A stretch of DNA of 64,000 nucleotides from Bugula neritina. Its lineage: Eukaryota > Animalia > Bryozoa. Shown here piece after piece: positions 10,141 through 59,621 of this stretch (positions within the stretch are counted from its first letter, which is position 1; each line of letters starts with the position of its first letter). The notes under the pieces are model-generated. The model saw only the letters and a program-made list of their open reading frames with translations. It did not search any database and was not told where the DNA came from. The position numbers and the translations under genes were made by a program. The stretch covers positions 8,165,929 to 8,229,928 of the forward strand of contig OZ037769.1 of the NCBI GenBank assembly GCA_964035545.1, written 5' to 3'.

Positions 10141-10296
10141 ACACAGTTTTATTTCCTGTTATTGCAGTGTTATCTCAAACCGATAGTTTCCTTCAGTAAA
10201 TATGAAACACTATTAAGCCTTTTTTCTCAGCATGTTGATATTCACATAACTTTACGATTAACATAATATCATAAACTGAATAAAGTACTTAACTAT

Positions 10297-10484
10297 TTAA
10301 GCATCACAGTTGACAGGTATAGATGAGCAAGTCTTTACAAGATCTACTCTTAGTTCTTCAACAAAGATGTGGAATGAAGATTGCCAGCCGGTGTAGGCAT
10401 CAGTGTCACCATACCCAGAGCATTGACCAACAGCATAGGTGATGTTGTGACTTCCCAAAGATATCCCGTGACATATTCCACTCA
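10297..10484 (-). CDS. Paralog A exon 14 (end of CTHRC1-like domain 3, stop)
   Basis: tttcag acceptor; VSGICHGISLGSHNITYAVGQCSGYGDTDAYTGWQSSFHIFVEEL...CDA*. Confidence 0.92.
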
Positions 10485-13400
10485 CTGAAATATTTAGCAG
10501 AAATCTGTATGAAGCTTGTTTCAGTTCTTCTTATAGTTATTTGCAAATACCTATTACCAATAATAAAACACTACATGATACGGTTGTGTAGATATTTGAT
10601 GTGTAAATCGAAAAAAAACAAAGAGCTCAGAAATGAAAAAGTTGAAGCCTGTTCGGAATGAGCATACAGTTCATGTTTCGTATAAGCAACGTATAATTTG
10701 TGTCGTCTAAAACCATTTACCTTGCATCGGATGGTGCATAGCTGTCTGAAAATTGAAGTAGTATATCCCTTCTATCCTCCCTGGTGAAGTACATTCAGCA
10801 TTGTCAATATTAAAAAACCTGTAATAAATACATATATTGGGTCAACATGTACAGTTTTATTACAATAACTAAAATTTCTTTTCATTAAACTATTATTTTC
10901 ATAATCTTACCATCTCCCACATAACGAGTACCCATTACCAGGCATAATCCGATGATCTCCACTAGCTGTTAGTCTGAGTCCAGTGTCTGCATACTCCTTC
11001 ACATAAGTTATGGTGTACAGATCTGCCACATCTTCACCTTTATTACTTGCCCAGTAGTGAAATCTCTCTAGATTTCCGCTATGACTTCGGTACATCTGAT
11101 TATTACGGGATATTACTAAAATATGCAATTTTTTCGAGTAAACATCAAAACAAGCCTGTGATAATAATTTCATTTAATACAGTTTTTATTTGGGTTATAG
11201 ATTTGAGACAGCAAAAAATGTCATATGCTAAGTGTTTTCTGCAGTATAAATTTACTTCAAATATACAAATTTTTCATTGCGGCAACAGGAATGCTTGCCT
11301 TGTTAATCTCGAGTTAAATAAAGTTTTTGGAAACTTTCATGTTTTTAGCAACTTAAAATTTTATAGTTGCAGAGCAAATTTTAAACAATTTGTTTTGTTG
11401 GCTATATGCATGCAGTTTAACTGAAACTATTTTTGATTCAAAAATGCTTCTCAATTATAGTAACAAGTTATATTTATTTAAAGTCGAAGCCTATAAACTT
11501 AGTTAAATGATGCATTCAGTAACAGAAACATACTTTTAATAAAAAAAATCATATTGTTGATTAGGAAAAACAAATACTTCTACAGAGATATATTAGAAAG
11601 TTGTATTCAAATATGTTTGGTAAGACAACTATATTATGTGACTTCTAACAAGAATTGATTTCTACTGCATTGACTTTGTGCATGATCTCTTCTCACTTTT
11701 TAATATGTATACTTAGAGCCTTGAATGCACTATGTAACACCAATTGGAGCTCATTCAGAGCATTTGCATGAACAATTTTACTTTGTTATCCGTATTATAT
11801 AGGAACTAAAATCTTAAAGTTATACTTATATACATATTAACTATATGCTCATTAGGAAGTTTATTAGCACCTCCATCAACCACAAGACCTCTCCTCACTT
11901 CTTCAATGTGCAGACGTGAAGGAGAGTTGAATCCACCAGTAATAATTCTTGTGGGTTGAGTGTAATTATTAGTGCATCTCCCAACATATATTTTAATGAT
12001 GTGTGTTCCTTCAGGCAATACGTTGTCACATATTCCTTCCACTGAAGCAAAAAGTTATGCAAAATACATATTTAGACTTACAGTTTTATAAAATGCTGGT
12101 AAAAATTGATTGATTATTAGTGCTTGTCATGCAGTTGACAGCTGCCAAAATAAAATTCGGTTTAGGCTTTTATAATTTAATATTTTAAATGATTTGCATG
12201 GGTCTGATTTTGACTCATTAAATGCTCTTTTAATCAGTTGCAACAAAAAAATGACATATTCACAACCATTATACAGAAATTTAGTGAAAAGCATAATCCA
12301 TAGTTAATTTTTTTAAATAAATTTTAAGAAACACGGTAGGCTACATAATTGCATTAAAATTTTTATTTGTGTTGCCTATCAAAAACAAATAGTTCTTAAT
12401 GGCTAACATAGCATCTTATGTAGCTAGAATAAATTTATCTCCAGTAACAGCTTAAATTAGTAATCAACTATAACTTGTCGTTCACTCAAACATATAGCTT
12501 ATGTAGTTGCTATACGAAACATAGCTTGATTACTGAGTTTGTATGCAATGTATCCCATGGCTGATCCGATACTGTAAACAAGCACTAATAATAACTTAAG
12601 ACGTATTACTATATAAAAAACGAAATCAAAGCCACAACAACACCCCTTATACTATCACACATTTTGCCATTTGCCATTTGCCATTTTGCAGGTTTAAAAG
12701 CAAAGTTAGATTCATGGTTTAAAATATCAAATTTACAAAAGTACCCTGCTAGTTTCATAAAACGATAAAACAAGACCTAGCCCAGAAGACCGGTAGCCTA
12801 ATAATTATAGTCTTATTATATACTTCAACTGACAAAACAAATAATCTTTACCATATGAAAATTACCAACGAAGAGCTTATACTGCACAACAACATTGCTA
12901 GGGATTACAAAAAAAGATCAAAACACACTTCAAGAAATGAACTTAAAAGCTAAACATCGTTGCTTTGAAAAAAGACAATGTAATATTTACAAGTTCCGCT
13001 TTTCCTATGATGCCTCCAGTAATTGTAGTTATAAGGTGAAGTGTGAGATATTACATAATCAAGTTGGGGAGAGCACTCACCGTCTTCTATCTTCACAAAC
13101 CTGTACAAATGTGAGCAGTATCTAAGAATATGCTAAAACCACCAACAGACATAGAAATTGAAAAATGTTGAAATACAACTATAAATTTTTAAATTCAAAC
13201 TGCTAAATTTTTTGAACGACAATTGAAGCTCAAAATGGTGCCTGTTAAATGGTAATTGGCCAAAAGGAACAAACTTTCACCAGCTACATTTTACTCTCGC
13301 CATGCATGCAACATTCTTTGGTCGCAGTCCGTGCAGCAAATCAGCATTGTGTGATTTTACAGTGACTTTTAAAGTACTTTCATTACAAAATATAAATGGC

Positions 13401-16400
13401 TTATATAGTGTTAAATTCTCAAAAACCTCAGTTAATCACCTTGACAATTGAAATTGTTTTTTAATTTAGACACAATATAGAAATAAATGTTGTACCAAAA
13501 AAAATTCAATATAGTAGTTTGTTTTTTTATTCAAGAAAAAAAGCCATTTATAAACTTTTTAAAAAATTTGATAGACCAAACCTGTTATACTGTTTAAAAT
13601 TTTGTGTGACCTAAAGCCTGAAACATGTATGAAATTGAGGTTGCTTTAACGGTATAATGCACTGGCGAAAAACTGCCAATAATGATCTATGATCATGACA
13701 AACATATATGCATATTTTTGAGTGATTTCCTAAAAAAAAGTTCCTTTAAGATTGTAAGATTACTATAATGAGAAGGAGGTTACTTGAAATTGTTCTAAAA
13801 GAGTCTTAAAACTTAATAAATTAAAAGTGTATATAGCAGCTCAACAAGTCGTAAAAATTAAGCATTGTAAAATAACTAAGAAATACAAACATAATTTATA
13901 TAAATAATATAAGTAATAAATTATGCTAGTAAAAATACCTGAAAGTGTCACCTAAACTTTTTTATTACTTTATTATCAGTCTAAAAGTCACTGTTTAAAA
14001 GTTATTACTTAATGCATGGAACTTACCACCTGGCGCAGTAAGGTGGTGCTTTTGTATCAACAACTACAGATGCCAATGCGCTGTACTTTATTCTTAGACT
14101 TGTGTTGTCTGAAACTTTGTCGTATGTCACTTCCTGTGTAAATAAAAAGCTAGCTTAACAAATAGATTATGCCCGCTTGTAACTATATATTTTTGTTTGA
14201 ATATAGAATATTTAATTTTTATCCGGAGTTTATTAATCCGAAAACATATTATAATGCATGCTTCAAACACTGTGTAAATACTCCAATAATAAAAATATTT
14301 TATTATAACACCGCTGTTGTAAAAGTCTGATAAAAAAGTAAGTCATGTTTCTTTCTTATCTTGGAGAGCAGTTGCAATGCTAGTAGCTAAGGTGCTGGGC
14401 TAGTAAACACAGGGTGGTAGGTTCAGATCTTGGTAAAGATAATTGGTGCTGCCAGAAAAGGCATTTAACGTCATAATTTTCTATGTGTCACAGTAAAAGC
14501 AAGCCTTTAATCTCTCAGGAGTGTTTTCATTGGTGATGACTTTAGAAATAAGTGCGAGGATGAATACAAAATTATTTAAAACAACAAATATTTAATTAAA
14601 CTCTTTTTAGTTGCCTATAGTTGAGATAATTTTAGCGCTATGGCTTGCCTTTAATAACGCAATCTAAGGTTTCAAAAAGATTAAAAAGAAATTGTGACAT
14701 TTGAAAATAAATTTGCCAAGATTCAATTGTTAGAATAGCTGCTACAGCAAAAAACATAATATTATATTGTTGGGTACAAAGTCACACGTCCTTTAACAAC
14801 TTTTTATAATTTTATAGTTTAATTTTTACTATCAAGTTTGATTTAAAAGCTGAAACTAAAAAAATGATATTATTCAGCCAGAGCTCATATTTTTGTGTGG
14901 TACGTTAGCTTAAGTGAATAAAGGTTTATGCATGCAGAAATTTAGAGATCATATAGTACTTTAATGAGGATTTCGTCAACATGAAGATCAACCGTCTGAT
15001 CAACTTCTTCATTCCAAGTCTCATACATGTAGTTGAACCCATTGAGGAGAGGGCAGAAAAGAAGGTTTTCTTCTAAAACATATTGGTGAAGGATATTTAT
15101 CTACAATACCCGATTTTCATCAAGCTGATAAAGACGACTACTTAACATTCATTATAAAGTTGCTACAGCAGCTGGCTAGTCAGCCAAATGAACTCGTAAA
15201 TTAACTTGATTGCTTACATATTCTTAAGATTTATCATTTGCCGGCAATACTAGAAAAGTTATGTGACATATATTTTATTTGTTTTAGCTATATAATAGAC
15301 TTAGCAATTTATGAATAATTAATCTGCTGCTTGAGCTTGAAATCAATAACAATATCAAATTTATTTTTTTAAGATATTGGCAGTGTTCCAAGTGAGTGTT
15401 ACCACAATGTATATATACACTGAACGGTTAATGGTACAAAGGACAAAGAAACACAAGTGTCTGGTGTTGATAATGATAGAGCTCAAACTCATTACATCTG
15501 TCGTGGTAAAGTTCGGAACTTGATGTATTGTTATTATTTATGATAGTTTCCCAATGTAATTATAACTAATTTTGATTCTGCTAAAGTTAAATTATGCATT
15601 TTTGCAAAATACTTTTAAAGGCTGTAAATAAGCAAAAAACCAGGAAAAACTTTTTTAATTTGTTATATCCTAACACTTTAGAGACTAATTAGAACTAAAC
15701 CAAAGAATTATTTGTCTTTACAGTTTTATTTTTAATTCAGCAAGCTGCTGCATACCTAGAGTTACTTGTGGTGGCACCATCTCCATAATCAACATCGTTC
15801 TTGCAGAGTTCCATCCAGAGTGAGCATTACTGGTTCCATAACCGTCACATGGGCCTACTACTAACTCTACTACTCTGTCACCAGCCTCCAGTCCATAGCA
15901 CGTGCCATCAACTGAAAATCAATAGGTTTAAGTCACGCTAACACTGCTGCAACAAATTTGTAGAAATAGACACCAATTCAAGTGAGTCTCTGTTTCTATA
16001 AGTGATGTTTTTTTGTTTGTAAAACTGCATTGTATCTGGTATCTTAAAAATAAAAGCGGGTATTTTAGTTTTTTGTAAGATCTGGTTATCTTGTTACATT
16101 ACCTTTCAAAAGTTTTTTTTCATAACAAGCATATTAGAATGTATTTCAGTAAATAGTTGTTTTAGAAGGCAATTAGCATATTTAAAAGAGTGTTGTTACT
16201 AAACCTACTATCTATTGCTCGTTGTAAATTTCCTGTGGTAGCACTGTAATCTAACACCTCAATAGTGTCTGGGTTAGTGCACTTGTTACCATCAAATGTC
16301 AAGTACCAGTGGTGACAAAAGTCTGCTATATTAAGATGTGCACTGACAGCCATGTGGATAATGACTCTCAGTCCTGATTCAACCGTAGACTTTGGGTATG

Positions 16401-19400
16401 TAGCTATCTGAAAATATTGTTAACATAATCTGACTAACAGCTTCTTGAATCTTGAGTCAACATAAACCTAGTTTTGTATAAATAATGAAATATATATATT
16501 ATATATTAATGAAATTGCTTTAAATATAAGTTTATTTTAGTTACTTTGTAAAAACAACAACTAGAAGTTTTCAACAAAATTGTGAATTAAACCTAATACA
16601 GTTGCTCAGTACAAACTACTGCTGTAATATTTTACAATTGTACATTTTACCATTATGATGCCTTCATCTTTGCTATCTTGAAGATCTGTAGACCAATAAT
16701 GTCTGATGTTTGTGTATTCATTTTTCAACCCACATTCAGTTGACTCTTCACCTGCTGTAGAATTATTCTCAAGTATAATTACTAGAATCAAGATGGTTGT
16801 AAAATAGACCTAATGTTATCTTACATAAATGCAATCTAACTTAGCGATTGTGCTTTTTTAAACATAGAAGCTTATTCATAAATACAATCTACAATTATTG
16901 CTATATGAAACGGGAATATATACGCTGTTGTTTTAATATTGTTACTTCGGTTTTGTGTACAGGCATAGCTAGACTGCTATGATATGTAAGATCTTGAATC
17001 ACAGTGAATTTTAACATTGCAAAAAGAGTGAGAGATTAAAAAGCCGTAATTATTTTCAGGAGAACATATTTCTACTTTATTCATAAAATAGTGTGAGTTA
17101 ATTGAATGCATCGATGCTTTGTTAAAGCACAATTATTTCATAGGTCCCTGTGATCATGTATTGTGGTTAAACATGAGAATTCACCTACCTAAGCAAATCG
17201 GGTTTTCCAAGACGGTCTCTCCACATCCAACCATGCAGATTTCTAAATTTGAACAATTTCTACCACTGCAGTTTGTCAGCTATCAAACAGAAAAATAGAC
17301 AAATATTTATGTACATCACAATTGAAAAATATATTCAATCAATATATTGAATCAGTAAACTAAAAATATACTTTGTGTTTAATATTTCTAAATATAACAA
17401 TTATTTATAATTTATATTTGCATGCATGTTAGCAGTAGCCCACAATAAAAGACTGAATAGAAAAAGTATTACAAAATATGTTTAATCACTGGCATACAGT
17501 CTTTAAATTATACAAAAGAGATAAAATAATAAATTTATAAAAAGACTTTTAATATGTTTTATTATGCTGGTTTGATTTTAATTATTGTTTAAAAACTGCG
17601 TAAATCAACAAGCTAAAATATTATTTGAAATGTGGTCTGTATACTCACTACACTATAGTTGTTCCCAATAAATTAGTAGTATAGCAGTATTTTACCCCGA
17701 AAAAAGGTACCAAATAATTTTAATAAAACGAAATACAATCTAATATAAAAGTTTAAAGGCACCATCACCTCTGAAATTGTTGAGGGAAATTTAGCTTATT
17801 TAAATTTGATTGGGGTTTAAAGCTTACCTCCCCTGTTGCCATTAGCTCCATGAAATATCCGTCAACGGAACCATTTTTAGAAGATAAATTCAAAGTGGAA
17901 GTTGACCCATTCAGTTCATAGCACATTCCTAAAACAGCTATGATGCGTCATAATAGATATGAAATCACCAAACAAATATTTTAGGTGCATCATAAAGATG
18001 CATAATTAACCTGATTTCTTATTTGCTAGTGAAAAAGAAATTGAAATAAAAGTATCGCATTAGCATTATTCTCATTTGTTTATTTATTATAATCATTTTA
18101 AGCTATACTTTAAAACATTTTGTTAAGTGCATACATATTTTATTAAATGAATCCATTGGACCCTAATATTAAAATTTCTTAGTTCACAATTTACACATTT
18201 CACACAAATTGCTACTTAAGTAACCACTAACATATGCTACATTTATGTAATATAATAAATGATACATATATTATATAATATATTAAAATAAAATTTGTTG
18301 TATGATGAATTTTTAGAAAATTCTGAAAACAAAGTTCTAGGCAGCTGGCAACATACTTTTGTGCCATTTCATGTTAGACTATAAATCATTGAGTGACGAA
18401 GACTTTTTGCATTTGCAAATATAAATATTTAAATATTATAATGAACTTTGCTGATGAAAATATGTGTGTGATTTAATAAAAGTAAGCTTATAAAAACGTC
18501 TACAAAAGGCAAAACATGTTCTTCCCAAATCACAATGCAAATTTGGTTTTTTTATAGAACTCATTATATAGTCACAATGTATGCAACAATTCAATGCACA
18601 CATTTTATTACATGCTTATATAATAACAAACACTGTTGTTATATATGTAGTTATTGACTTAATATAAATAATTGATGATTATTTTGTAATATAAAAACAA
18701 AATAGCTTTTTAGTGCAACCCTAGACATCAAACAATATTTTAATAATGCAGTTAATGTACAGAAAAGTGATTATATGACAAAGAAATTTAAACTAAAATA
18801 ATGATCCATTAGGCATAAATTAGATGTCAATTGTTGTCAAACCTAATTGAAAATACAAAAAAAGCAAAGCTTATAGGTGCATTATTGATTTGTTCAAAAG
18901 TTTAAGCAGTTGTTTTAGTATCATGTAACAATTAAGAATAGCAATGCAATTTGACTTACATGCAGACGCAAACAATTCACTACCACGTGTGTCTATATCC
19001 ACACGCGGTTATAGAGGGTTGCTTGAGTCTGTAAGTCAAAATCCCTAGCTATTCCTAATTGTTACATGATATTATTATAACAAATACTTGAAATATTAGC
19101 AATTGTATCAGTAGCTATATGTGCTATGCTAATTTACTGGCTGGAAATTAATATTTTGAACTTCCTAGTTTATAGAACAAAATAATTTTATTTCTAAAAC
19201 ATAGCATGATTTTTCATCAACATAGCTTCTATAATAAGCAATTTATTATAACTGCTATCTTTTACCTGCATTGCTTCTAAAAATAGCATTACATTGCAAA
19301 GGGAAATTTCTCCAGCAGTTGACTAAACACTCTGTAAGACTTCTGGTTGATGATTTTCTGGTTATAAGAGAGCTCTTAGGGTTGAGGTACTGGTCGTTTG

Positions 19401-19979
19401 ATACACTGACAGAGTTTCCACAGTCTGGTAAATCTTCAAAATATCATGTGCAGGATACCAGGCTTAGCATTATCACAGTTTTATTCTATAGGATTTGATT
19501 ATTTGTAAAACTTGTAATGTATTATACTGATAAGTGCAATTATTCTACATGAAAATAATATGATTTTCTAAACTTAATAGAATAACTATACAATAGGTTG
19601 CCACACAATACATTCAATGTTTAAACATTTTTAACAGCAACTACAGTATTATTTGGAGTGAGTTAGAAAGTTATGTTGATTCATATGTTACTGCATGAAT
19701 CTAATCTTGTAGGAAATAATTATTTAGTTATGCAAGTGAATTCTGTAGTCTGGATGGCACAAAACAATACCAATAAATCTAACTTTTTAGGCTGTTTAAA
19801 ATTTACAATGAAAACAAAACCTAAATTTTAAAATTCATATTGAGCTGCTTTTCCCATTGATAACTTTATAAGTGATCTATAATGACGGAAACACACTTAC
19901 CTAATATACCCGTCATAGCTAAATGAAATGATGATGAACATAACCAACTGATGAACAGTGTCGTACTTTTCAACTTCAT
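10297..19979 (-). CDS. Paralog A: secreted PAN/apple + 3x CTHRC1 C-terminal-like domain protein, ~629 aa, 14 coding exons
   Basis: Exons: 19979-19901, 19433(or 19424)-19266, 17928-17828, 17279-17189, 16754-16651, 16407-16209, 15911-15756, 15072-14960, 14133-14027, 13100-12991, 12041-11871, 11115-10911, 10818-10721, 10484-10297. All GT-AG, phases join into one 1,890-nt frame, and exon lengths equal those of paralog B. Repeated motifs YxK..LR, CxxW[FY]..C..P, GxC, VGxC, TGW..IEE match the CTHRC1 C-terminal domain. Confidence 0.88.
10721..10818 (-). CDS. Paralog A exon 13 (domain 3)
   Basis: ttacag/gtaaat; WFFNIDNAECTSPGRIEGIYYFNFQTAMHHPMQ; phase 2-1. Confidence 0.9.
10911..11115 (-). CDS. Paralog A exon 12 (domain 3)
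   Basis: ttttag/gtaaga; ...FHYW..DVADLYTITYVKEYADTGLRL..SLCGRW; phase 1-2. Confidence 0.88.
11871..12041 (-). CDS. Paralog A exon 11 (domain 2)
   Basis: cttcag acceptor; LEGICDNVLPEGTHIIKIYVGRC..TGGFNSPSRLHIEEV; donor (gtgcta) less certain. Confidence 0.85.
12430..13460 (+). mobile_element. Decayed Penelope-like element (RT thumb to GIY-YIG) spanning exon 10 in antisense
   Basis: Colinear plus-strand relic motifs: YTK, RYCKQALI, KYPASFIKR, KKIK..LNIV, SSNCSYKVKC, VGESTHRL, SSI*EYAKTTNRH, ENVEI. Paralogous copy ~46650-47660. Confidence 0.55.
12991..13100 (-). CDS. Paralog A exon 10 (domain 2)
   Basis: gtacag/gtaaat; WFVKIEDGECSPQLDYVISHTSPYNYNYWRHHRKSGT; phase 2-1 like exon 13; the only suitable exon I found between exons 9 and 11. 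Confidence 0.7.
14027..14133 (-). CDS. Paralog A exon 9 (domain 2)
   Basis: acacag/gtaagt; EVTYDKVSDNTSLRIKYSALASVVVDTKAPPYCARW. Confidence 0.9.
14365..14520 (+). mobile_element. Degraded tRNA-derived SINE-like relic in intron
   Basis: A-box-like tagtagctaagg and B-box-like ggttcagatc; more decayed copy at ~53320-53470. Confidence 0.35.
14960..15072 (-). CDS. Paralog A exon 8 (start of domain 2)
   Basis: ttttag/gtacta; EENLLFCPLLNGFNYMYETWNEEVDQTVDLHVDEILIK; phase 1-0. Confidence 0.85.
15756..15911 (-). CDS. Paralog A exon 7 (end of domain 1)
   Basis: tttcag/gtatgc; IDGTCYGLEAGDRVVELVVGPCDGYGTSNAHSGWNSARTMLIMEM. Confidence 0.9.
16209..16407 (-). CDS. Paralog A exon 6 (domain 1)
   Basis: tttcag/gtaggt; IATYPKSTVESGLRV..FCHHWYLTFDGNKCTNPDTIE..QRAID. 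Confidence 0.9.
16651..16754 (-). CDS. Paralog A exon 5 (start of domain 1)
   Basis: CAGCAG tandem acceptor (16754 or 16751)/gtaaaa; GEESTECGLKNEYTNIRHYWSTDLQDSKDEGIIM. Confidence 0.88.
17189..17279 (-). CDS. Paralog A exon 4 (Cys-rich, follistatin-N-like module)
   Basis: tgatag/gtaggt; LTNCSGRNCSNLEICMVGCGETVLENPICL. Confidence 0.8.
17828..17928 (-). CDS. Paralog A exon 3 (PAN/apple C-terminal half)
   Basis: ttttag/gtaagc; GMCYELNGSTSTLNLSSKNGSVDGYFMELMATGE. Confidence 0.85.
18919..19071. repeat. ~150-bp intronic hairpin/foldback
   Basis: tatcatgtaacaattaagaatagc / gctattcctaattgttacatgata (23/24), tttgacttaca / tgtaagtcaaa, palindromic centre; copy at ~57810-57964. Confidence 0.75.
19266..19433 (-). 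CDS. Paralog A exon 2 (PAN/apple-like domain)
   Basis: DLPDCGNSVSV..TRSLTECLVNCWRNFPLQCNAIFRSNA; C-x3-C-x7-C then C-Y-E-L in the next exon is the PAN/apple spacing; phase 1-1; acceptor 19433 (AAG) or 19424 (CAG). Confidence 0.82.
19901..19979 (-). CDS. Paralog A exon 1 (ATG, signal peptide-like)
   Basis: MKLKSTTLFISWLCSSSFHLAMTGIL; donor AG|GTAAGT; acceptor ttttag 1 nt before the ATG. Confidence 0.8.

Positions 19980-20583: not shown

Positions 20584-20586
<3 letters not shown>

Positions 20587-20622
<36 letters not shown>
20587..20622. repeat. (TA)n microsatellite
   Basis: Direct reading; much longer at the paralogous site 59462-59620. Confidence 0.95.
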
Positions 20623-20625
<3 letters not shown>

Positions 20626-43750: not shown

Positions 43751-43938
43751 TTAAGCATCACAGTTGACAGGTATAGATGAGCAAGTCTTTACAAGATCTA
43801 CTCTTAGTTCTTCAACAAAGATGTGGAATGAAGATTGCCAGCCGGTGTAGGCATCAGTGTCACCATACCCAGAGCATTGACCAACAGCATAGGTGATGTT
43901 GTGACTTCCCAAAGATATCCCGTGACATATTCCACTCA
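43751..43938 (-). CDS. Paralog B exon 14
   Basis: Identical in sequence to A exon 14. Confidence 0.92.
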
Positions 43939-46900
43939 CTGAAATATTTAACAAAAATCTGTATGAAGCTTGTTTCAGTTCTTCTTATAATTATTGGCAA
44001 ATACCTATTACCAATAATAAAAAATTACATGATATGGTTGTATAGATAGTTGACATGTGAGCCTAAAAAAATAAAGAGCTCAGAAACGAAAAAGTTGAAG
44101 CCTGTTCGGAATGAGCATACAGTTCATGTTGTGTATAAGCAACGTATAATTTGTGCCGTCTAAAACCATTTACCTTGCATTGGATGGTGCATATCTGTGT
44201 GGTAGTTGAAGTAGTGTACCCCTTCTATTCTCCCTGGTGAAGAACATTCAGCTTTGTCAATTTTAAAATACCTGTAATCAATACATATATTGAGTTAACA
44301 TGTACAGCTATTTTACAATAACTGAAAATTTTTATCATTGAACTATTATTTTCATAAGCTTACCATCTCCCACATAATGAGTACCCATTACCAGGTACAA
44401 TCCGATGATCTCCACTAGCAGTTAGTCTGAGTCCAGTGTCTGCATATTCCTTCACATAAGTTATGGTGTACAGATCTGCCACATTCTCATCTTTATTAAT
44501 TGCCCAGTAGTGAAATCTCTCTAGATTTCCACTGTGACTTCTGTACATCTGATGATTATGAGATATTACTAAAATATGCAATTCTTTTGAGTAAACATCA
44601 AAAAAGCCTGTGATAATAATTTCATTTAGTACAGTTTATATTTGGATTATAGATTTGAGACAGCAATTAATGTCATATATGCTGAGTGTTTTCTGCAGTA
44701 TAAATTTACTTCAAATATACAAGTTTTTCATTGTGGCAACAAGAAAGCTTGCCTTGTTAATTTCGAGTTAAATAAAGTTTTTGGAAACTTTCACGTTCTT
44801 AGCAGCTTAAAATTTTATACTTACAGAGCAAATTTTAAAACATTTGTTTTGTTGGCTATATGCATGCATATTTACAGAAAATAATTTTGATTCAAAAATG
44901 CTTCTCAATTATAGTGAGAAGTTACATTTATTTAAAGTCAAAGCCTATAAACTTAGTTATATAGTGCATTTAATAAAAGAAATATGCTGTTAATAAAAAC
45001 TCATGTTGTTGATTAAGAAAAGCAAATATTTCTACAGAGATATATTAGAAAGTTGTATTCAAACATGTTTGGTAAGACAACTATATTATGTGACTTATAA
45101 CAAAAATTGATTTCCACTGCATTGACTTCGTGCATGGTCTCTTCTCCCTTTTTAATATGTATACTTAGAGCCTTGAATGCACTATATATAACACCAATTG
45201 GAGCTCATTAAATTCAGAGCACTTGCATGAACAATTTTACTTTGTTATCTGTATTATATAGGAACTAAAATCTTAAAGGATTGCTCTATCTTGTCTAATA
45301 AATGGCCATTTAGGTCAAACACACATAATATTGTGTTTTTCTAAGCATGCATTGACAAAAAGCATTTGACCAAAGGTAGAAAAAGTTAGTTGAAGTTGAG
45401 GGTGTAGATTGGTAACAGCCAAAACGCCGATTTTGAAATGAGCTGGGAAATGTGACGTAACAGCGCCAGCATTCCTGCTGGTCACGTGACTATACAAATG
45501 AATAACTATAGAAATATGACTGTGAGATGTGATCTTTCAGCTCGTAATTTGTATATTTATAGAAGTGCAAATGTGAATTATCTCAATCTATAGTTTTTTG
45601 ACATGTTAAATAACATGTATGTGATAACATTAGGCCATATTTTGCTTGTAAACATAGAAAAAAACATTGCAAAAACATGCATTCTTTAGGATGAATGCCT
45701 GCGATCGATCTAAACTAGGTCAGATTGTGCAATATTACGGGCGCACCAAAGCTGACCTATATAGCGCACTGTAACTGCTTGAGCGTTATTGGTTGATGTT
45801 GCGCTCTGCAACCTTGAATACTAGCGTTATAGTTAGCACGTGCAGCATAGTTACTGGCGTTCACACGTCACGTATTAGGCTATTCTTTTTCATGGCTGAA
45901 AATTTTACCTCCCTCAAAATTGGAATTTTGAAAAGCTGTTTTCTAGGCATATATCCCTTTGCAAAGTCACAATTGTTTGCATACACATTAGATTATAGTT
46001 CATAATTATAATGTGATTGTAATAAACTAAGATAGAGCAATCCTTTAAAGTTATATTTATATACATATTAACTATATGCTCATTAGGAAGTTTATTAGCA
46101 CCTCCATCAACCACAAGACCTCTCCTCACTTCTTCAATGTGCAGACGTGAAGGAGAGTTAAATCCACCAGTAATAGTTCTTGTGGGTTGACTAAAACTAT
46201 CAATGCATCTCCCAACGTATATTCTAATGGTGTGTGTTCCTTTAGGCATTATGTTGTCACATATTCCTTCCACTGAAGCAAAAAGTTATGCAAAATGCAT
46301 ATTTATACTTACAGTTATATAAAATGCTGGTAAAAAATAGTTGATGATTAGTGCTTGTCATACAAGCTACCAAAAATGAAATTCTGTCTAGGCTTTTATA
46401 ATTGAAATATTTTAAATGACTTGCATATGGGTCTGATTTTGACTCATTAAATGCTTTTTTAAATCAAACAGTTGCAACAAAAAATGACATGTTCACAACC
46501 ATTATACAGAAATTTAGTGAAAAGCATAATCCATAGTCAATTTTTTAAAAATTTTTTTTATGAAACACGGTACATATAATTGCATTAAAATTTGTATTTG
46601 TGTTGCATATCAAAAACAAATAGTTCCTAATGGCTAACATAGCACCTTTTGTGGCTAGAATGAATTAATCTCCAGTAACAGCTTAAATTAGTAATCAACT
46701 AACTAGTCGTTCACTCAAACATATAGCTTATGTAGTTGCTATACGGAACATAGCTTGATTACTGAGTATGCATACAATGTCTCCCATGGCTGATCCGGTA
46801 CTGTAAACAAGCACCGATAAAAACTTAGGACGCATTACTATATAAACTACGGATTCAAAGCCACAACAACACCCCTTATACCATTAAATAATTTGCCAGG

Positions 46901-49900
46901 TTTAAAAGCAAAGTTAGATCCATGGTTTAAAATATCAAATTTTCAAAAGTACGCTGCTAGTTTCATAAAACGATAAAACCAGACCTAGCCCAGACGACTG
47001 GTAGCCTACTAACTATAGTTTTATTATATACGTGAACTGACAAAAAAAGATGTTTACCATATGAAAATTACCGAAGAAGAGCTTATACTGCACAACAACA
47101 TTGCTAGGGATTGCAAAAAAAGATCAAAAGAGACCTCAAGAAATAAACTTAAAAGCTAAACATCGTTGCTTTGAAAAAAAATTATGTAATATTTACAAGT
47201 TCCGCTTTTCCTATGGTGCCTCCAGTATTTATAGTTATTAGGTGAAGTGTGAGGTATTACATAATCAAGTTGGGGAAAGCACTCACTGTCTTCTATCTTC
47301 ACAAACCTGTAAAAATGTGAGCAGTATCTAAGAATAATATGTTAAAACCACCAACACACATAGAAATTGAAAAGTGTTGAAATACAGCTATAAGTTTTTA
47401 AAGTCAAACTGCTAAATTTTTTAAGTGACATTTGAAGCTTAAAATAGTGCTTGTTAAATGGCAAACTTTCACCAGCTACTTTTTACACTCGCCATGCATG
47501 CAACATTCTTTGGTCGCAGTCCGTGCAGCAAATCAGCACTGTGTGATTTTACAGTGACTTTTAGAATACTTTCATTACAAAATATGAATAGCTTAAAAGT
47601 GGTAAATTCTCAAAAACCTCAGGTAATCACCTTGACAATTGAAATTTTTGTTTAATTTAGACATAATATAGAAATAAATATTGTACCAAAAAATGTAATA
47701 TAGTAGTTTGTTTTTTATGCAAGAAAAAAACAGTTATTTATAAATTTTTAAAAAAGTGTAATAGGCCAAACTATTTATTGTTTAAAATTTTGTGTGACCT
47801 AATATGGAGTGCCAAATGGTCAAAAATTGCTTATTATTGCATCTCATATGCTTATAATAAAGTATCTAACCATTATTCTCTCTCATATGCTCACAAAACA
47901 CTCTCATTGGTCTATAATTTGCTCTCATACCCTTATTATTTGTGCTCTTAGGTCTATTATTTGGTCTCACACTGTCATTATTCACTCCCATACCCTTATT
48001 TCTCTTTCTTTTATGCTCATTATTCAGTCCCATACCTCCATTATGCACTCTCATACATTATTCATTCTCTTATGCTTATTATTCTCTCTCATACCCTTAT
48101 TACTGTCTTGCTTTTGCGCCTGATTCTGACTCACTAGTATTCGTGTACACGTCACAATAGTTGAGTATATGCCAGTCTATTCGGGTCACACTACTAAGCT
48201 CCACCCCATTTATCAAATCTGATTGGATAACTGCAATGACACTAAGAGTAATAATAAATGCTGGGTGGGTGCCTAGGTTTGGTTAGCCATTCTTCATTCA
48301 TAAGTATCAGTCTAGGAGTGAACAACTTATACCAGCTAGATTCTTATCTCGATATTAACTGTTAAGCTAAATCACCCTTTGCAAATTTACAGATTGGTTG
48401 GGCTTTCGAGTTCCTATAACTATTCAAACCGAATAGAGTTTGCTTTAAACTTCTAGTTTGAGGTAGAATTGCTCACATTTTTATAAGTGGTGTTCAAAAT
48501 GCAGCCTAGCAGTTTACAGATGATTGTAGTTAAAAATATTATTAAATAGATAGCTGACAAGCTAAATATTTGCTTTTTAATTCAATGCCAAAATACTAAA
48601 ATTAGCAGTTGGTTATTTTCACAAACCATTATTAAATTATGAGCTGCCAGTCGATTTTATCAGGTTTCGTAAGTGTAACTGCCCGTCTAGATTTACATGA
48701 AGTTTCATACAGGTGTATTTTTTAGTGTAGTTTATTTTCCACCAAAGTTGTTCACACCATTTACATCGTGAAACTCTTTTACCTTTTCTAGGAGAGAGTT
48801 GATATAAGTAAGAAATATTTTACACCATGCAATTGTGAGAATAGCTAATATATATGAAAGTAGATGTGGATATCTGAATAGAACCCTGCCACCTAAGGGT
48901 TCTTACTGTTGTGACCTGGTTAAGTGTCTATATCTGTTTTACTCATTATGTGAAAAGTTAAGGTATTTGTTTTCTCAGTCATCATTTTGAGTGCAATATT
49001 AGATAGAATGTGCTTGATTGTAAAGCAGTCAGCTAGTTGTTATAGTGAGTGCAGTCAGTGCAGAATAAAACATTTTACTCTTTCACATACACGCAATCCA
49101 CCTTGTTACACTTACTAGAATAGTCGCGAGGATAAAAAACAGTAACATTTTAATGTGAAAAGTGACAAAACAAGTGCTAAAAATATGAGAAAATTTGGTG
49201 ACTCATCACTGTTGAAATGTGTGACAACACAAAGGCAGCGATGGTTTTATACTTAGCGTGGCAATGTTTGTAAAATTTTATAATGGTTTTTGCAAATGAT
49301 GATTGACCTAAATGAAATATTATAACAACAGGTTGAATTGCTCTGCGGTTACCTTTGTTGCTATCAATAAATTGGCAGCCATGCAAGTGTCAGTAAGCTA
49401 ACTAGGTAACGGAACTAAATTTATGAAATTTTATTATTATTATCAAAGACGCTACAATAAATACAGCACAGCAGCCAAAAGCTGTTCCAAGTAGCAAGTA
49501 GCAACAGTTTTATGATTTCATTCTGAATTTTTAGATTATAAATTATAGCTGCTATATGAAATATATAAGGCTACTTATATGAAATGGTTTACGAGCTGAA
49601 TTTGTGGTCCCCTGTCCCTTTAAAGTGCCTTTAAAAATAGAAAATGCTAAAAAAAATTTATTAAATAATCTAATAATGCAGCCCAAAGTCTTTGTAGCAA
49701 GTAAAAAATACAACAAAACTAATGTCAAAAGCTAAAAGGAAAGTTTAGGATTAGCTACAACAGCTCAAATGTTAGGTGACTTTAAAGTTGATCTAGTAAT
49801 TTTTTCTTTGTATTTCTCAGCCAGTTCGGGCAACTTATTAAAAATTACTGTTATCAGCTGGTCATTTTTTTCAAAAAGTCATAAAAGATCTTTTAAAACT

Positions 49901-52900
49901 ATCTAGCCAAGTACTTTCTACCGGCAGCGCATTCGGAGGTTGTCAGATTATAACTGCTCATTGGGGTAAAACTGTGTATGCCCCAGTAAACCTAAAATTT
50001 TCCTAATGCTTGTGTACTGTTCTATGAATAGTCAGGTGCTTTTCCTTATAATATTAAGTATAATAACCAGCTACTAATGCATGCCTTCCTATTAATAGCC
50101 ATTGCTATCTTACTGATTATGTAAAATTGACTGTTACTCTGCGGTATTTCTGATTACATAATTTATATGAGGTGGGTTTTCATTGCGAAATGTAGGTAAC
50201 TTGTAGCAAACATAATCCCGCAACACTCACCACGATGCTTCTGGTGTGAGGCAGCTATAGAGAATTGGTTATTTCAAATATTGCATTTATTATTTCACTA
50301 TTTTGCATAAAATAGTTACAACTTCTAAACTTCATTCTGTGCAATGCAGTCGTATAAGCCTGTAACCAACCATTTTCTAATCATGGCACAAAAAAAATAA
50401 AAACAAACTTATATTGAACTGGTTCCAAAAGTATGAACCAGCTATATAAGCCGAATTTATAATACTTGAGCTTATATTTACTATCATTCAATTTTCGTGG
50501 GAACCTGGTATCAGTGAAAGTAAATTGAAACTTGAATGTAAACTTGGCTGCAAACTGTCAAACGGTTATTGTTGATTAGTTTACAAAATATTACTATTTA
50601 AACAAATGAACCGATATTACATAATATTGCAAGAAAGTACTTCTAATTTTTGTTGCTTCAAATCTCTTGTATAGAATAATGCAGCAATAACCTCTGAAGC
50701 GTAAAACTTTTAAGAGTAACTACTTAAATGTGAAGCAGTAATTTATAGCAGTAATTAGCTCAAGTAAAATAGGAATTGCTTTAAAATTAAAAGCTATTTT
50801 TGGACAGAGTTTCCCTTTTAAATTATGCTAATCTAAGATTATACTGTATGTAAGCACACGTAAGGTACTTTGACTGTCTACGTCAGGCTGTTAAACAATT
50901 ACATATAAAATTATTTTTTATGTATATGAATTGTAGAAGGAAAAACCTTACTGTAATTAATGCTTTATATCTACACGTGCTAAGAAACGTGCAGCCTGTA
51001 ATAGTTATTGGGACACTGTTGTGTAATGATTAATAGGAATTTGGGGTAAACTAACTTGAAAAAACCTGATGCTGTAGTCACAAGCTCAAACTGAATTTTA
51101 CAATTTGTGGCCTCCACAACAGAATATTCTACCTCTTTAGTCCTTGCTCTGAAGGCTTGGACACTCTTGTTCTAAGCCCTAAGATATTTTATTACTTTCC
51201 AACACTGGCTTTGGCAAAAATTTGTTTAGCTTTACATAATGTCCCTCTAGATATTCAGATTAGTTAAAAGATCGGTGTCAACAAACTATTTTTGTTTATG
51301 TATAGTAAGTTTAACCTAAACTTTAAAGGCATTCTACTACACATTTATAAATTATGCAAAACACTAAATTTTGACGTTGAATGTTGCAATTATCGTTTAA
51401 TGGAGAAAAATTATTTAGGGATTACCCTAGTTTTATCAGACTAGCTACTATTATTTTGGTGTTCTATTTTATTTATAGTCATTATTAACTGTAGCTTATG
51501 TATTTAAAATTACTGATAATGTCAGGAATTGCTTCTCCTGTGATTATCTCATAAGTTTCAAGTGACACAAACCAAGCCCATTGTATTGTTTTGCTCATAT
51601 AACTAAGTTCTATAAGATCTATATAGCTAGTTTTAAAAGTATGAATTCTTCATTTTATTAACTTCAGAAATATTTTTGTTACATCTATACAAGATTGAGA
51701 TTAAGATAGGAATCTTATAGCTCCCACAATATGAAGTAGGTGCAGATATAAGAATTTACTATACAACATACAACTATACAACCATTAAAATCTAACAATT
51801 CTACAAAGTATTAGGAAATACTAACAGCTCTGTCTCACACTGCCAACAAACACAAAACACTAGTCAGTCCTTGTCTAACACTAACAGCTATATCCTTAGC
51901 TTTCTACACTTTCAAATATTTTGGTAGCCGGTAGGGCTCATCTAACAAAAACTAAGAGTTTCTAACAAAATTTTATTAATGAGGAATTTTCTGTCAAAAT
52001 CTCCATTTCTGCACAATATTCTGGTAAAACTTGTTCACTCCTAGACTGATACTTATGAATGAAGAATGGCTAACTAAACCTAGGCACCCACCCAGCATTT
52101 ATTATTACTCTTGGTGTCATTGCAGTTATCCAATCAGATTTGATAAATGGGGTGGAGCTTAGTAGTGTGACCCGAATAGACTGGCATATACTCAACTATT
52201 GTGACGTGTACACGAATACTAGTGAGTCAGAATCAGGCGCAAAAGCAAGACAGTAATAAGGGTATGAGAGAGAATAATAAGCATAAGAGAAAGAATAATG
52301 TCTATAACAGAGCAAATAATAGGGGTATGAGAGTGCATAATGGAGGTATGTGACTGAATAATGAGCATAAAAGAAAGAGAAATAAGGGTATGGGAATGAA
52401 TAATGACAGTATGAGACCAAATAATAGACCTAAGAGCACAAAAAATAAGGGTATGAGAGCAAATTATAGACCAATGAGAGTGTTTTGTGAGCATATGAGA
52501 GAGAATAATGGTTAGATACTTTATTATAAGCATATGAGATGCAATAATAAGGGAATTTTTGACCATTTGGCACTCCATAACCTAAAGCCTGAAACATGCA
52601 TGAAACTGAGTTTGCTTTAAGGGTATAATGCACTGGCAAAAAACTGCCATCTTTGATCTATAATTATGAGAAACATATTATATGCATATTTTTGAAGAAT
52701 TTCCTGAAAACAAAACTTCTTTTCAGATTGTAAGATTACTATAATGAGAAAGAGGTTACTTGAAATTTTCCTGAAAAAGTTTTTAAACTAATCAATAAAA
52801 GATGTATATAGCAGCTCAACAAGTCATGAAAATTAAGCATTGTAAAATAACTAAAGAAAACTAACATATCTATATAAAATATATAAGTAATAAATTATGC

Positions 52901-55900
52901 TAGTAAAATTACCTAAGAGTGTCAACTAAACTTTCTTACTACTTCAAGTTCAGTGTGAAAGTCAGTGTCTGAAAATTATTACTTAATACATAGAACTCAC
53001 CACCTGGCGCAGTGAGTTACTGCATTTGTATCAAGCACTACAGATGCCAATGCGCTGTACTTTATTCTTAGACTTGTGTCGTCTGAAACTTTGTCATATG
53101 TCACTTCCTGTGTAAAGAAATGCTAGCTTAGCAAATAAATGCTCGATTGATACTATATGTTTTTGTTTGATTATAGGATATTCAATTTTTATTCATAGTT
53201 TAAAAATCTCAACATATATCATAATGCATGTTTCAGACACTCTGTAAATACTTTATTCATAAAAAATATTGTATTATAACTAATCTGATAAAAAATCAGT
53301 CATGTTTCTTTCTCATCTTGGAGAGCAGTTGCGATGCTAATAGCTAAACTACTGGGATAGTAAATACATGGTAGTATAGTTTAGGTCTTAGTAAAGATGA
53401 TTGGTGTTGCCAAAAAAAGCATTAACCATCATTTCCCATTTCTCACAATAAAAGTGAGATTTTAATCTCTCAGGAGTTTGTTCATTGGTGATGACTTTAA
53501 AAATAAGTATGGGGATAAATAACAAATTGTTTAAAACAACAAATACTTAATTAAAGTCTTTTTAGTTGCCTACAGTTGAGATAATTTTTGCACTATGACT
53601 TGCCTTTAATAATGCAATCTGAGGTCTCAAAAAAAAATTGTGACTTTTGAAAATAAGTTTGCCAAAATTAAATTGTTAGAATAGCTGCTACAGCAAAAAA
53701 CAAAAGATATTGTTGGATACAAAGTCACACGTTCCTTTGACAACTGTTTATGATGTTATAGTTTAATCTTTACTCTCAAGTTTGACATAAAAGCTGAAAC
53801 TAGAAAAATGGTATTATTCAGACATAGTTGATGCTGGCATATAGAGATTATATGGTACCTCAATGAGAAGGTTCTCAGCATCAAGATCAATCGTCTGATC
53901 AACTTCTTTATTCCAAGTCTCATACTTGTAGTTGAACCCATTGAGGAGAGGGCAGGAAAGAAGGTTTTCATCTAAAAATATTGGTGAAGGATATTTATCT
54001 ACAATACTTGATTTTCATCAAGCTGATAGATACAACTACTTAACATTCGTTATAAAGTTGCCACAGCAGCTGGCTAGTCAGCTGAGTGAACTCGTAAATT
54101 AATTGATTGCATAAAATATTCTTAAAATTTATCATCGGCCTGCAATACTAGAAAAGCTGTATGTGGCACATATTTTATTTGTTTTAGGTAAAAGGCTGAG
54201 CAATTTATAAATAATTATTCTGCTGCTGGAGGTTGAAATCAATAACAATATCAAATTAATTTTTTTAAGATATTTGCAGCGTTCCAAGTGAGTTTTACCA
54301 CAATGTATATACACTAAACAGTTATTGGTACAAAGAACAAAGAAACACAAGTTTCTGTCGCTGATAATCATAGAGCTCAAACTCACTATACATCTGTCAT
54401 GGTAATGTTGGGAACTTGATGTATTATTGTTATTTATGATAATTTCCCAACTAAAAATTATAATTGATTTTGATTTTGCTAAAATTCAATTACGAATTTT
54501 TTGTAAAGTACTTTTAAGAACTGTGATGCTAAAAGCTAGAAAAAAAGTTTTAATTTGCTTTATCTCAACACTTTAGAAACTAATTAGAACTAAATCAAAG
54601 AATTCTTTGTCTTCACAGCTTTATATTTAATTCAGAAAGCTGCTGCAAACCTAGAGTTACTTGTGGTGGCACCATCTCTATAATCAACATCGTTCTTGCA
54701 GAGTTCCATCCAGAGTAAGCATCACTGGATCCATAACCATCACATGGGCCGACTACTAACTCTACTACTCTGTCACCAGCATCTAGTCCATAGCATGTAC
54801 CATCAACTAAATATTAGTAAGTTTTGGTGGCACTAACATTATTATAAAAAAATTATAGAAATCAACATCAATTCAAGTTAGTCTCTGCTCCGACAAGTTA
54901 TAATGGATTTTCATTTATTAAATAGCATATTGTAGGTACCTTATAATATCTCAACAATAAAAATTGGCATTAAACATCTTTAAAAATATTATCTTGTTAT
55001 AACATTAGGTAACAAAGGTTTGATCCATAGGCATGTATTCTAAGAAGTTGTTTTTTAGAAGACACTCAATATCTAAAAGAGTGTTTATACTAAGCCTACT
55101 GTCTATTGCTCGGTGTAATTCTCCTGTAGTAGCACTGTAATCTAACACCTCAATAGTGTCTGGGTTAGAGCACTTGTTACCATCAAATGTCAAGTACCAG
55201 TGGTGACAAAAGTCAGGTCTATTATGATGTCCTCTGACAGCCATGTGGATAATGACTCTCAGTGCTGATTCAGCCCTAGACTTTGGGTAAGTAGCTGTCT
55301 GAAAATATTGTTGACATAATCTGACTAGCAGCTCATTAAATCTTGAGTTAACACAAACCTAGTTTTGTATAAATAATGAAGTATATATATTATATATTAA
55401 TGCAATTGCCTTAAATATAAGTTTATTTTAGTTACTTTTTAAAAACAACAACTGGATGTTTTCAAAAAAATTGTGAATTAAACCTAATACAGTTGCTCAG
55501 TACAAACTATTGCTGTAATATTTTACAATTGTACATTTTACCATTATGATGCCTTCATCTTTGCTATCTTGAAGATCTGTAGACCAATAATGTCTGATGT
55601 TTGTGTACTCATTTTTCAACCCACATTCAGTTGATTCTTCACCTGCTGTAGAATTATTCTCAAGTATAATTACTAGAATCAAGATGGTTGTAAAATAGAC
55701 CTAATGTTATGTTACATAAATGCAATCTAACTTGGTGATTGTGCTTTTTTCAAACATAGAAGCTTATTCATAACTATAATCTACAATTATTGCTATATGA
55801 AACGGGAATATATACACTGTTATTTTAATATTGTTACTTCGGTTTTGTGTACAGGCATAGCTAGACTGCTATGATATGTAAGATCTTGAATCACAGTGAA

Positions 55901-59460: not shown

Positions 59461-59621
<161 letters not shown>

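What the first reader, a model, noticed from the sequence alone, without database searches (positions are those of the whole stretch)
10297..19979. Hidden 14-exon gene: secreted PAN/apple + triple CTHRC1-like domain protein with no collagen helix
Seen: 14 GT-AG exons join into one stop-free ~629-aa frame, independently in both duplicate units. Established: canonical CTHRC1 is signal peptide + short Gly-X-Y helix + one C-terminal domain, and it trimerises; PAN/apple domains mediate protein or carbohydrate binding. Inference: here three diverged CTHRC1-type domains sit in one chain, each keeping four Cys (CxxW, xC..P, GxC, VGxC), behind a PAN domain and a follistatin-N-like module. This may be a single-chain pseudo-trimer that replaces collagen-driven trimerisation. 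I do not recognise this architecture from any named family, but I cannot search to confirm that it is new.
Basis: partly seen in the sequence, partly recalled or inferred. Interest (0 to 1): 0.85.

Follow-up and report, generated by a model that had tools for sequence, protein, structure and literature searches.

The report
Single-chain triple CTHRC1-head secreted protein gene
This is a real, intact 14-exon animal gene, present twice in the window, for a secreted protein with three different CTHRC1-type domains on one chain and no collagen stalk; models of two relatives fold those domains into one C1q-like three-lobed head, a design no paper I found describes.

Summary
On the minus strand, 14 GT-AG exons (19979 to 10297) give one stop-free frame of 629 codons plus stop. 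The duplicate copy (58877 to 43751) has the same structure. Three further paralogs on the same contig are also fully intact.

Pfam CTHRC1_C hits fall in three separate sets of exons. No Gly-X-Y run exists in any frame of either unit. PAN/apple is supported only indirectly. The "follistatin-N-like" label is not supported.

The same architecture exists as uncharacterised proteins in the brachiopod Lingula, in one transcript-like contig, and as partial "CTHRC1" models in Bugula neritina.

AlphaFold models of two such relatives pack the three domains like engineered single-chain C1q and adiponectin trimers (Z 25-26 over about 340 residues). Single-domain matches reach only Z about 7. Exactly three domains is the commonest count among multi-domain relatives.

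The window's own spliced protein was not searched or folded as a joined sequence. No RNA run was available, so no transcript confirms the junctions.

This scan has already reported the same family at least eight times on other DNA of this genome. I found no paper on it. Function is inferred: an extracellular recognition or binding protein.

The parts
19901..19979 (-). Exon 1: start codon and hydrophobic N-terminal leader (putative signal peptide). An in-frame ATG also lies at 19991.
   Evidence: Donor is GT. The exon is conserved in paralogs. No SignalP run was possible.
19266..19433 (-). Exon 2: first part of the PAN/apple-like domain (4 Cys).
   Evidence: Colinear match to the PAN_1 region of P0005: hhalign E 0.0023, blastp E 7e-4. 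No direct Pfam hit.
17828..17928 (-). Exon 3: second part of the PAN/apple-like domain (1 Cys, 3 N-x-S/T sites).
   Evidence: Only a weak colinear match (E 0.22). No hhalign hit.
17189..17279 (-). Exon 4: small Cys-rich spacer module (5 Cys).
   Evidence: hhalign to the colinear Cys-rich stretch of relatives, E 0.0045. No Pfam family.
16651..16754 (-). Exon 5: linker Cys and start of CTHRC1_C domain 1.
   Evidence: The acceptor at 16754 is the only one conserved in paralogs P0 and P5. Frame checked.
16209..16407 (-). Exon 6: middle of domain 1 (C-x-x-W and x-C-x-x-P motifs).
   Evidence: Pfam PF25815, 27.8 bits, profile positions 27-80.
15756..15911 (-). Exon 7: end of domain 1 (G-x-C and V-G-x-C motifs).
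   Evidence: Pfam PF25815, 40.7 bits, profile positions 95-137.
14960..15072 (-). Exon 8: linker Cys and start of domain 2.
   Evidence: Match to the start of domain 2 of P0033, E 0.005.
14027..14133 (-). Exon 9: domain 2, up to the C-x-R-W motif, whose W codon is split across the intron.
   Evidence: matches to relatives at E 0.001-0.002.
12991..13100 (-). Exon 10: domain 2 core (x-C-S-P motif).
   Evidence: It is homologous to E13 and to part of E6 by position. It matches only paralog exons in the genome, not the dispersed repeat beside it.
11871..12041 (-). Exon 11: end of domain 2 plus the linker to domain 3.
   Evidence: Pfam PF25815, 23.2 bits, profile positions 95-136. The donor at 11871|11870 is the only one kept in all seven paralogs, and sequence diverges with indels just beyond it.
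10911..11115 (-). Exon 12: linker and first half of domain 3.
   Evidence: Pfam PF25815, 25.6 bits, profile positions 1-57. The acceptor at 11115 is conserved in all seven paralogs. Upstream sequence carries indels, including a 1-nt deletion in unit 2.
10721..10818 (-). Exon 13: middle of domain 3.
   Evidence: Pfam PF25815, 22.4 bits, profile positions 53-83.
10297..10484 (-). Exon 14: end of domain 3, a short tail with 2 Cys, and the stop codon.
   Evidence: Pfam PF25815, 54 bits, profile positions 93-137. Identical in unit 2.
43751..58877 (-). Unit 2: the duplicate gene. Exons: 58877-58799, 58336-58169, 56820-56720, 56171-56081, 55645-55542, 55298-55100, 54806-54651, 53971-53859, 53107-53001, 47306-47197, 46272-46102, 44568-44364, 44271-44174, 43938-43751.
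   Evidence: Exon lengths match unit 1, all introns are GT-AG, and the 630 codons are intact. Introns 9 and 11 are enlarged by insertions.

Best explanation
The region holds one protein-coding gene of a bryozoan-type animal genome. It is one of two intact tandem copies in the window and belongs to a family of dozens.

The product has 629 residues, in this order:
- a hydrophobic leader;
- a PAN/apple-like domain;
- a small Cys-rich spacer;
- three diverged CTHRC1 C-terminal domains joined by short linkers, with no collagen repeat.

Shown: the gene structure, its conservation, and the three CTHRC1_C domains.

Inferred from models of two relatives with the same architecture: the three domains fold back on each other into one C1q/TNF-like three-lobed head. 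One chain would then form what ordinary CTHRC1 is thought to form from three collagen-tied chains. Because the lobes are separate domains, each can diverge, giving an asymmetric head comparable to the A/B/C head of C1q.

Inferred more loosely: the protein is an extracellular recognition or binding molecule, probably for glycans or matrix and cell-surface ligands. The PAN module would be a second binding site. The tandem gene array would supply variants.
For: Gene reality:
- 14 GT-AG exons give one frame.
- Five paralogs keep all 630 codons.
- Exons have 0 gap columns against 239 in introns between U1 and U2.
- dN/dS is 0.3-0.5.

Domains:
- PF25815 hits fall in three series of exons.
- There are four Cys per domain.
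- There is no G-X-Y run.

One gene rather than several:
- Colinear full-length relatives P0005, P0116, P0117 and P0121 (Lingula) and P0033 carry PAN_1 plus three CTHRC1_C domains.
- P0033 is an uninterrupted 611-aa ORF on a 2.6-kb contig.

Pseudo-trimer:
- Model of P0005: pTM 0.69. Residues 168-600 align to the single-chain adiponectin trimer 4dou (Z 26.4, rmsd 3.7 A, 333 residues) and to the single-chain C1q head 5hzf (Z 26.3).
- Independent model of P0033: pTM 0.74, Z 25.1 to 5hzf.
- Single-domain matches reach only Z about 7.
- Among relatives with more than one domain, exactly three is the commonest count (14 proteins). One protein has nine.
- All five distant loci sampled in this genome also show three domains in series and no collagen repeat.

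Leclere et al. 2020 (PMC7058181) had already proposed a C1q-like fold for the CTHRC1 C-terminal domain.
Against: - No transcript evidence for this genome. The only run holding the sequence is DNA.
- The window's own protein was not folded. The joined step was left out. Its identity to the modelled relatives is only about 30-45% per exon.
- The alignments behind the models are shallow (8-9 sequences). AlphaFold may favour a learned trimer packing for tandem jelly-roll domains.
- One-to-one orthology of the three domains with those of Lingula is not resolved.
- Nothing tests function.
- The leader is only moderately hydrophobic in most copies.
Confidence: 0.75

Rival explanations
1. Beads on a string. 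The three CTHRC1_C domains do not pack within one chain. Each pairs with domains of other chains, giving cross-linked oligomers or a matrix network rather than a single-chain head.
For: No structure of this protein exists. The models come from shallow alignments. One relative, P0031 from a sponge, has a collagen repeat and four domains, which does not fit a simple triplet.
Against: Two independent models give confident whole-chain packing (pTM 0.69 and 0.74). They match single-chain trimers at Z 25-26, against Z about 7 for one domain. Counts of three or nine domains dominate. The linkers are short.
Confidence: 0.12
2. The copies in this window are silent, recently duplicated genes on their way to decay. 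The open frame is only a leftover of recent duplication.
For: There is no RNA evidence. A neighbouring paralog (P4) carries a 2-nt insertion in exon 7 that breaks the frame. dN/dS is about 1.0 for domain 2 between U1 and U2.
Against: At dS 0.10-0.28, five copies keep all 630 codons and all 26 splice sites. Introns have collected 239 gap columns and exons none. Overall dN/dS is 0.3-0.5.
Confidence: 0.08
3. The model wrongly merges two genes: an upstream PAN/Cys-rich gene and a downstream CTHRC1-domain gene.
For: PAN and the spacer are not confirmed by direct HMM hits on the exons. There are no transcripts.
Against: The phases fit across all 13 junctions in five copies. Full-length relatives carry the same order on one chain, one of them on an intron-free contig. 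Exons E2 and E4 align colinearly to those relatives.
Confidence: 0.03

Closest known systems
Vertebrate and cnidarian CTHRC1 (Cthrc1 family as defined by Leclere et al. 2020, PMC7058181)
   Same: It has the same C-terminal domain family (Pfam PF25815). It appears to be secreted. The C-terminal domain is proposed to be C1q-like and to trimerise.
   Different: Canonical members have one C-terminal domain behind a short Gly-X-Y collagen repeat. Here there are three diverged domains on one chain, no Gly-X-Y, an added PAN-like domain and Cys-rich spacer, and only four Cys per domain.
Lingula anatina uncharacterised proteins LOC106162620, LOC106180315, LOC106178942 and LOC106165752 (P0005, P0116, P0117, P0009/P0121), and the transcript-like contig protein P0033
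   Same: The order of parts is the same: leader, PAN_1, Cys-rich spacer, three CTHRC1_C domains. Length is about 600 aa. There is no collagen repeat.
   Different: Identity is only about 30-45% per exon. One-to-one domain orthology is unresolved. The window protein has an extra two-Cys tail. None of these proteins has been studied.
Engineered single-chain trimers of C1q-family and TNF-family heads (PDB 5hzf/5hkj C1q, 4dou adiponectin, 4zch APRIL-BAFF-BAFF)
   Same: The predicted three-lobed packing of three jelly-roll domains in one chain is the same (Z 21.7-26.4).
   Different: Those are man-made fusions of natural subunits. Sequence identity is 6-8%. There is no sequence-level membership in Pfam C1q.
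Bivalve C1qDC proteins with three tandem gC1q domains (HcC1qDC6 of Hyriopsis cumingii, PMC5519582)
   Same: It is a natural secreted protein with three globular-head domains in tandem and no collagen stalk. It comes from an expanded invertebrate family and is linked to immune response (abstract seen).
   Different: The domain family differs (gC1q, not CTHRC1_C). It has no PAN module.

Membership tests
CTHRC1 sensu stricto (Leclere et al. 2020) | Collagen triple-helix (Gly-X-Y) repeat between the signal peptide and the C-terminal domain | tested here: not met
   No run of four or more G-X-Y triplets in any of six frames of either unit. None at five other family loci.
CTHRC1 sensu stricto (Leclere et al. 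2020) | CTHRC1 C-terminal domain | tested here: met
   PF25815 hits on E6, E7, E11, E12, E13 and E14. The best are 54, 40.7 and 27.8 bits against a cut-off of 27.
CTHRC1 sensu stricto (Leclere et al. 2020) | N-terminal signal peptide | tested here: inconclusive
   E1 encodes a leader that starts basic and then turns hydrophobic. Maximum 10-residue hydropathy is 1.35 in most copies and 2.86 in paralog P5. No signal-peptide predictor was available.
Pfam PF25815 CTHRC1_C domain | Three separate full domains in one chain | tested here: met
   There are three domain-end exons (profile positions 93/95 to 136/137), in E7, E11 and E14. Matching N-terminal and middle pieces lie in colinear order. Whole-domain scores could not be obtained because exons were scanned apart.
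PAN/apple (Pfam PF00024 PAN_1) | HMM match to PAN_1 | tested here: inconclusive
   No hit on E2 or E3 scanned separately at E up to 1. E2 aligns colinearly to the PAN_1 region of relatives (E 0.0023; E 7e-4). The relatives pass the PAN_1 cut-off. Their modelled N-terminal domain matches apple domains at Z 7.4-8.0, which is borderline.
Follistatin-N / Kazal-type module | HMM or fold match | tested here: not met
   E4 has no Pfam family at E up to 1. The equivalent stretch of the relatives' models has low confidence and no structural match.
C1q/TNF-like trimeric head (fold level) | Three jelly-roll lobes packed around a pseudo-threefold axis | tested here: inconclusive
   Met for the two relatives P0005 and P0033 (Z 25-26 to single-chain C1q and adiponectin). 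Not tested on the window protein, because the joined sequence was not folded.
gC1q domain (Pfam C1q) by sequence | HMM match | tested here: not met
   The Pfam scan of ten relatives returned CTHRC1_C, PAN_1, Collagen and fn2 only. There was no PDB sequence hit.

The most novel reading that the evidence does not exclude
Lophophorates, and independently some protists, evolved natural single-chain C1q-like heads from the CTHRC1 domain. That freed each of the three lobes to diverge. In this bryozoan-type genome the design has expanded into tandem arrays. The lobes, above all domain 2, diversify while the leader, PAN and spacer are kept uniform. That would make it a combinatorial extracellular recognition repertoire of an immune-like kind that nobody has studied.
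Probability: 0.3. Interest if true: 0.7.

Novelty: new variant of a known kind. Interest (0 to 1): 0.55.

Why it matters
CTHRC1 is studied in people for its roles in wound repair, fibrosis and cancer, yet its C-terminal domain has no solved structure. I found no PDB sequence match. A natural protein that strings three such domains into one predicted C1q-like head supports the view that the domain is a trimerising member of the C1q/TNF fold. It would also offer a monomeric, collagen-free form that should be easier to express and crystallise.

It further shows that the single-chain trimer, so far known mainly as an engineering device, has a natural counterpart. That counterpart is a large gene family in bryozoans and brachiopods with no literature, and public Bugula annotation represents it only by fragments.

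Tried and rejected
- RNA evidence: the run search found one holder only. Its contigs cover the introns and show no joints, so it is DNA.
- First exon model: I first used an upstream E5 acceptor (16781), an E11 donor at 11899 and an E12 acceptor at 11155, giving 642 aa. I rejected it because unit 2 has a 1-nt deletion there, paralog P0 has a 2-nt deletion, and L017 lacks that donor GT.
- A candidate small exon at 18992-18960 was rejected. Joined to the next exon it would create a TGA (read).
- Direct Pfam PAN or follistatin hits on single exons: none.
- Word-based homolog searches with P0005 and P0033 found few relatives.
- Assigning each window domain to Lingula domain 1, 2 or 3 with position-specific HMMs was inconclusive. 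Only domain 2 pairs clearly.
- Organism: Bugula neritina proteins match this genome at no more than 85-90%. It is therefore a related bugulid-like species, not that assembly.
- Another note claims that E10 lies inside a Penelope GIY-YIG relic. I found no GIY-YIG Pfam hit on the opposite strand. The dispersed repeat covers 12689-12957, in the intron beside E10, and does not reach the exon.
- Joined step left out. The spliced 629-aa product was never sent to any search or folding tool. Frame continuity was checked by walking codons exon by exon.
Full report
**What is there**

The window is AT-rich animal DNA of about 30% G+C. It holds a tandem segmental duplication. Unit 1 (about 9498-28941) and unit 2 (about 42951-62720) are 88-93% identical.

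The finding's stretch lies on the minus strand. Stop-free segments there read like pieces of the CTHRC1 C-terminal domain. Pfam CTHRC1_C (PF25815) matches six of them, in three colinear series:
- Series 1: profile positions 27-80, then 95-137 (16419-16165 and 15918-15721).
- Series 2: positions 95-136 (12054-11809).
- Series 3: positions 1-57, 53-83 and 93-137 (11173-10910, 10841-10710, 10530-10300).

**Exon model**

Reading the sequence gives 14 exons with GT-AG introns. Three boundaries had more than one in-frame choice. My first choice gave 642 codons.

I then fetched five further paralogs from the same contig. Only one set of sites is conserved in all copies, with indels and divergence immediately outside it:
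- E5 acceptor at 16754;
- E11 donor at 11871;
- E12 acceptor at 11115.

With these sites the gene has 1890 nt, or 629 codons plus stop.

Unit 2 has the same 14 exons with identical lengths, and all its sites are intact. Paralogs P3, P0 and P5 also keep all 630 codons. P4 has a 2-nt insertion in exon 7.

I walked the frame exon by exon to check continuity.

**Is it a real gene?**

No RNA run holds it. The single holder is DNA: its contigs cover the introns and there are no joints. The case therefore rests on conservation.
- Between U1 and U2 the exons have no gap column in 1890 nt. The introns have 239 gap columns in about 7870 columns.
- Exon identity is 94.3% and intron identity 91.1%.
- Pairwise dN/dS over all exons is 0.30-0.51. 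It is lowest in the leader, PAN and spacer part (0.06-0.20). It is highest in domain 2, at about 1.0 between U1 and U2, but on small counts.
- The 5' part (about 16500-20500) and exon 14 are 95-100% identical in introns and exons alike. That points to gene conversion or a mosaic duplication rather than to selection alone.

**Domains**

No Gly-X-Y run of four or more triplets occurs in any frame of either unit.

The PAN label has no direct HMM support on the separate exons. Exon 2 does align colinearly with the PAN_1 region of relatives (hhalign E 0.0023; blastp E 7e-4).

Exon 4 aligns with a Cys-rich spacer of the relatives (E 0.0045). It matches no Pfam family, so "follistatin-N-like" is unsupported.

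The leader is basic and then hydrophobic, but I had no signal-peptide predictor.

**Relatives**

A full HMMER search with the last exon found 115 proteins. Several are about 600 aa long with three matched stretches. Pfam gives PAN_1 plus three CTHRC1_C domains for P0005, P0033 and P0009.
- P0005, P0116, P0117, P0118 and P0009/P0121 are uncharacterised proteins of the brachiopod Lingula anatina.
- P0033 is an uninterrupted ORF on a 2.6-kb Logan contig, which looks like a transcript.
- Bugula neritina records hold only fragments: KAF6039055.1 (85 aa) and KAF6026444.1 (named CTHRC1, 321 aa, two domains).

Those Bugula proteins match this genome at no more than 85-90%. The genome is therefore a related bryozoan, not that assembly.

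The genome (216 Mb) has at least 89-120 exon matches, on contigs C3, C5, C6 and C9. Five distant loci that I sampled all show three domains in series and no collagen repeat.

**The pseudo-trimer idea**

I modelled two relatives with the same architecture.
- P0005: mean pLDDT 72.9, pTM 0.69, with low confidence only in the leader and spacer.
- P0033: mean pLDDT 71.1, pTM 0.74.

Foldseek's best PDB matches for P0005 are engineered single-chain trimers:
- the C1q head (5hzf, 5hkj);
- adiponectin (4dou);
- APRIL-BAFF-BAFF (4zch).

VIA-align results:
- P0005: Z 26.4 (4dou; rmsd 3.7 A; 333 residues; model residues 168-600), 26.3 (5hzf), 24.5 (Cbln1 trimer 5kca) and 22.8 (4zch).
- P0033: Z 25.1, 24.8, 23.6 and 21.7 for the same entries.
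- Matches to single jelly-roll domains (TNF-like lectins, Pgp3, exosporium proteins) reach only Z about 7.

The high scores therefore come from the three-lobed packing.

The N-terminal domain of P0005 matches apple and PAN domains at Z 7.4-8.0 (SML-2 lectin, factor XI, prekallikrein, HGF N domain). That is borderline.

Among all relatives with more than one domain, exactly three is the commonest count (14 proteins). One protein has nine. The set includes protist and metagenomic sequences with other N-termini.

Leclere et al. 2020 had proposed a C1q-like fold for the CTHRC1 C-terminal domain. They noted collagen-less versions only in choanoflagellates, dinoflagellates and bacteria. They do not mention tandem domains or a PAN module.

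**Limits**
- The window's own protein was not folded.
- The alignments behind the models are shallow (8-9 rows).
- Domain-by-domain orthology with Lingula is unresolved. I cannot say whether the triplication is shared or repeated.
- Function is untested.

**What it most likely does**

It is most likely a secreted monomer carrying one asymmetric C1q-like head plus a PAN module. I read this as an extracellular recognition or binding protein. Three things support that reading:
- C1q/TNF-fold heads and PAN domains usually play that role.
- The family is organised in tandem arrays.
- Replacement changes are unevenly spread over the lobes.

This is inference.

**Novelty**

The architecture already sits unnamed in databases. 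A bivalve gC1q protein with three tandem heads has been published (PMC5519582). I found no paper on a tandem CTHRC1-domain protein or on this family. I rate it a new variant of a known kind.

The scan itself has already reported the same family at least eight times on other DNA of this genome, with the same reading. I reached my reading before seeing those notes. They are not independent evidence.

Noticed in passing
window 24290-28223 (direct repeats 24718-24941 and 27856-28079): A G+C-rich insertion (42-47% against about 30% background) is present in unit 1's flank but not in unit 2. It is bounded by 224-bp direct repeats that are 95.5% identical. Inside are ORFs, one with a weak integrase zinc-binding match. 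It looks like an LTR-retrotransposon remnant.
   Followed up: partly
window 32036-33223, minus strand: A 395-aa ORF has a clear reverse-transcriptase domain (RVT_1, E 1.3e-26). It is probably a non-LTR retrotransposon lying between the two units.
   Followed up: partly
window 47802-52580 (inverted repeats 47803-48335 and 52579-52021): Unit 2's intron 9 carries a 4.8-kb insertion that unit 1 lacks. It is bounded by inverted repeats of about 550 bp that are 93.6% identical, in the manner of a foldback or DNA transposon. Intron 11 of unit 2 has a further insertion of about 770 bp (45278-46045).
   Followed up: no
window 12689-12957: A dispersed repeat lies in intron 10, ending 34 bp from exon 10. 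Copies of 75-81% identity sit on contigs C1, C3, C7, C8 and C9. Exon 10 itself matches only paralog exons.
   Followed up: partly
G000:C5:8377000-8396000 (paralog P4; loci L014 and L019): This neighbouring copy is almost identical to unit 2 (dS about 0.02). It has a 2-nt TA insertion in exon 7 that breaks the frame, so it is a young pseudogene or an assembly error.
   Followed up: partly
window 16500-20500 and 10000-10500 against unit 2: Identity between the two units is mosaic. It is 95-99% across the 5' exons and introns, and exon 14 is identical between the units (97% across its 500-bp bin). It is 82-93% in between. This suggests gene conversion, or duplications of different age.
   Followed up: partly
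P0031 (Oscarella pearsei) and P0123 (metagenomic, 1395 aa): Other unusual CTHRC1_C architectures exist. A sponge protein has a collagen repeat, an fn2 domain and four CTHRC1_C domains. A metagenomic protein has nine CTHRC1_C domains in a row.
   Followed up: no
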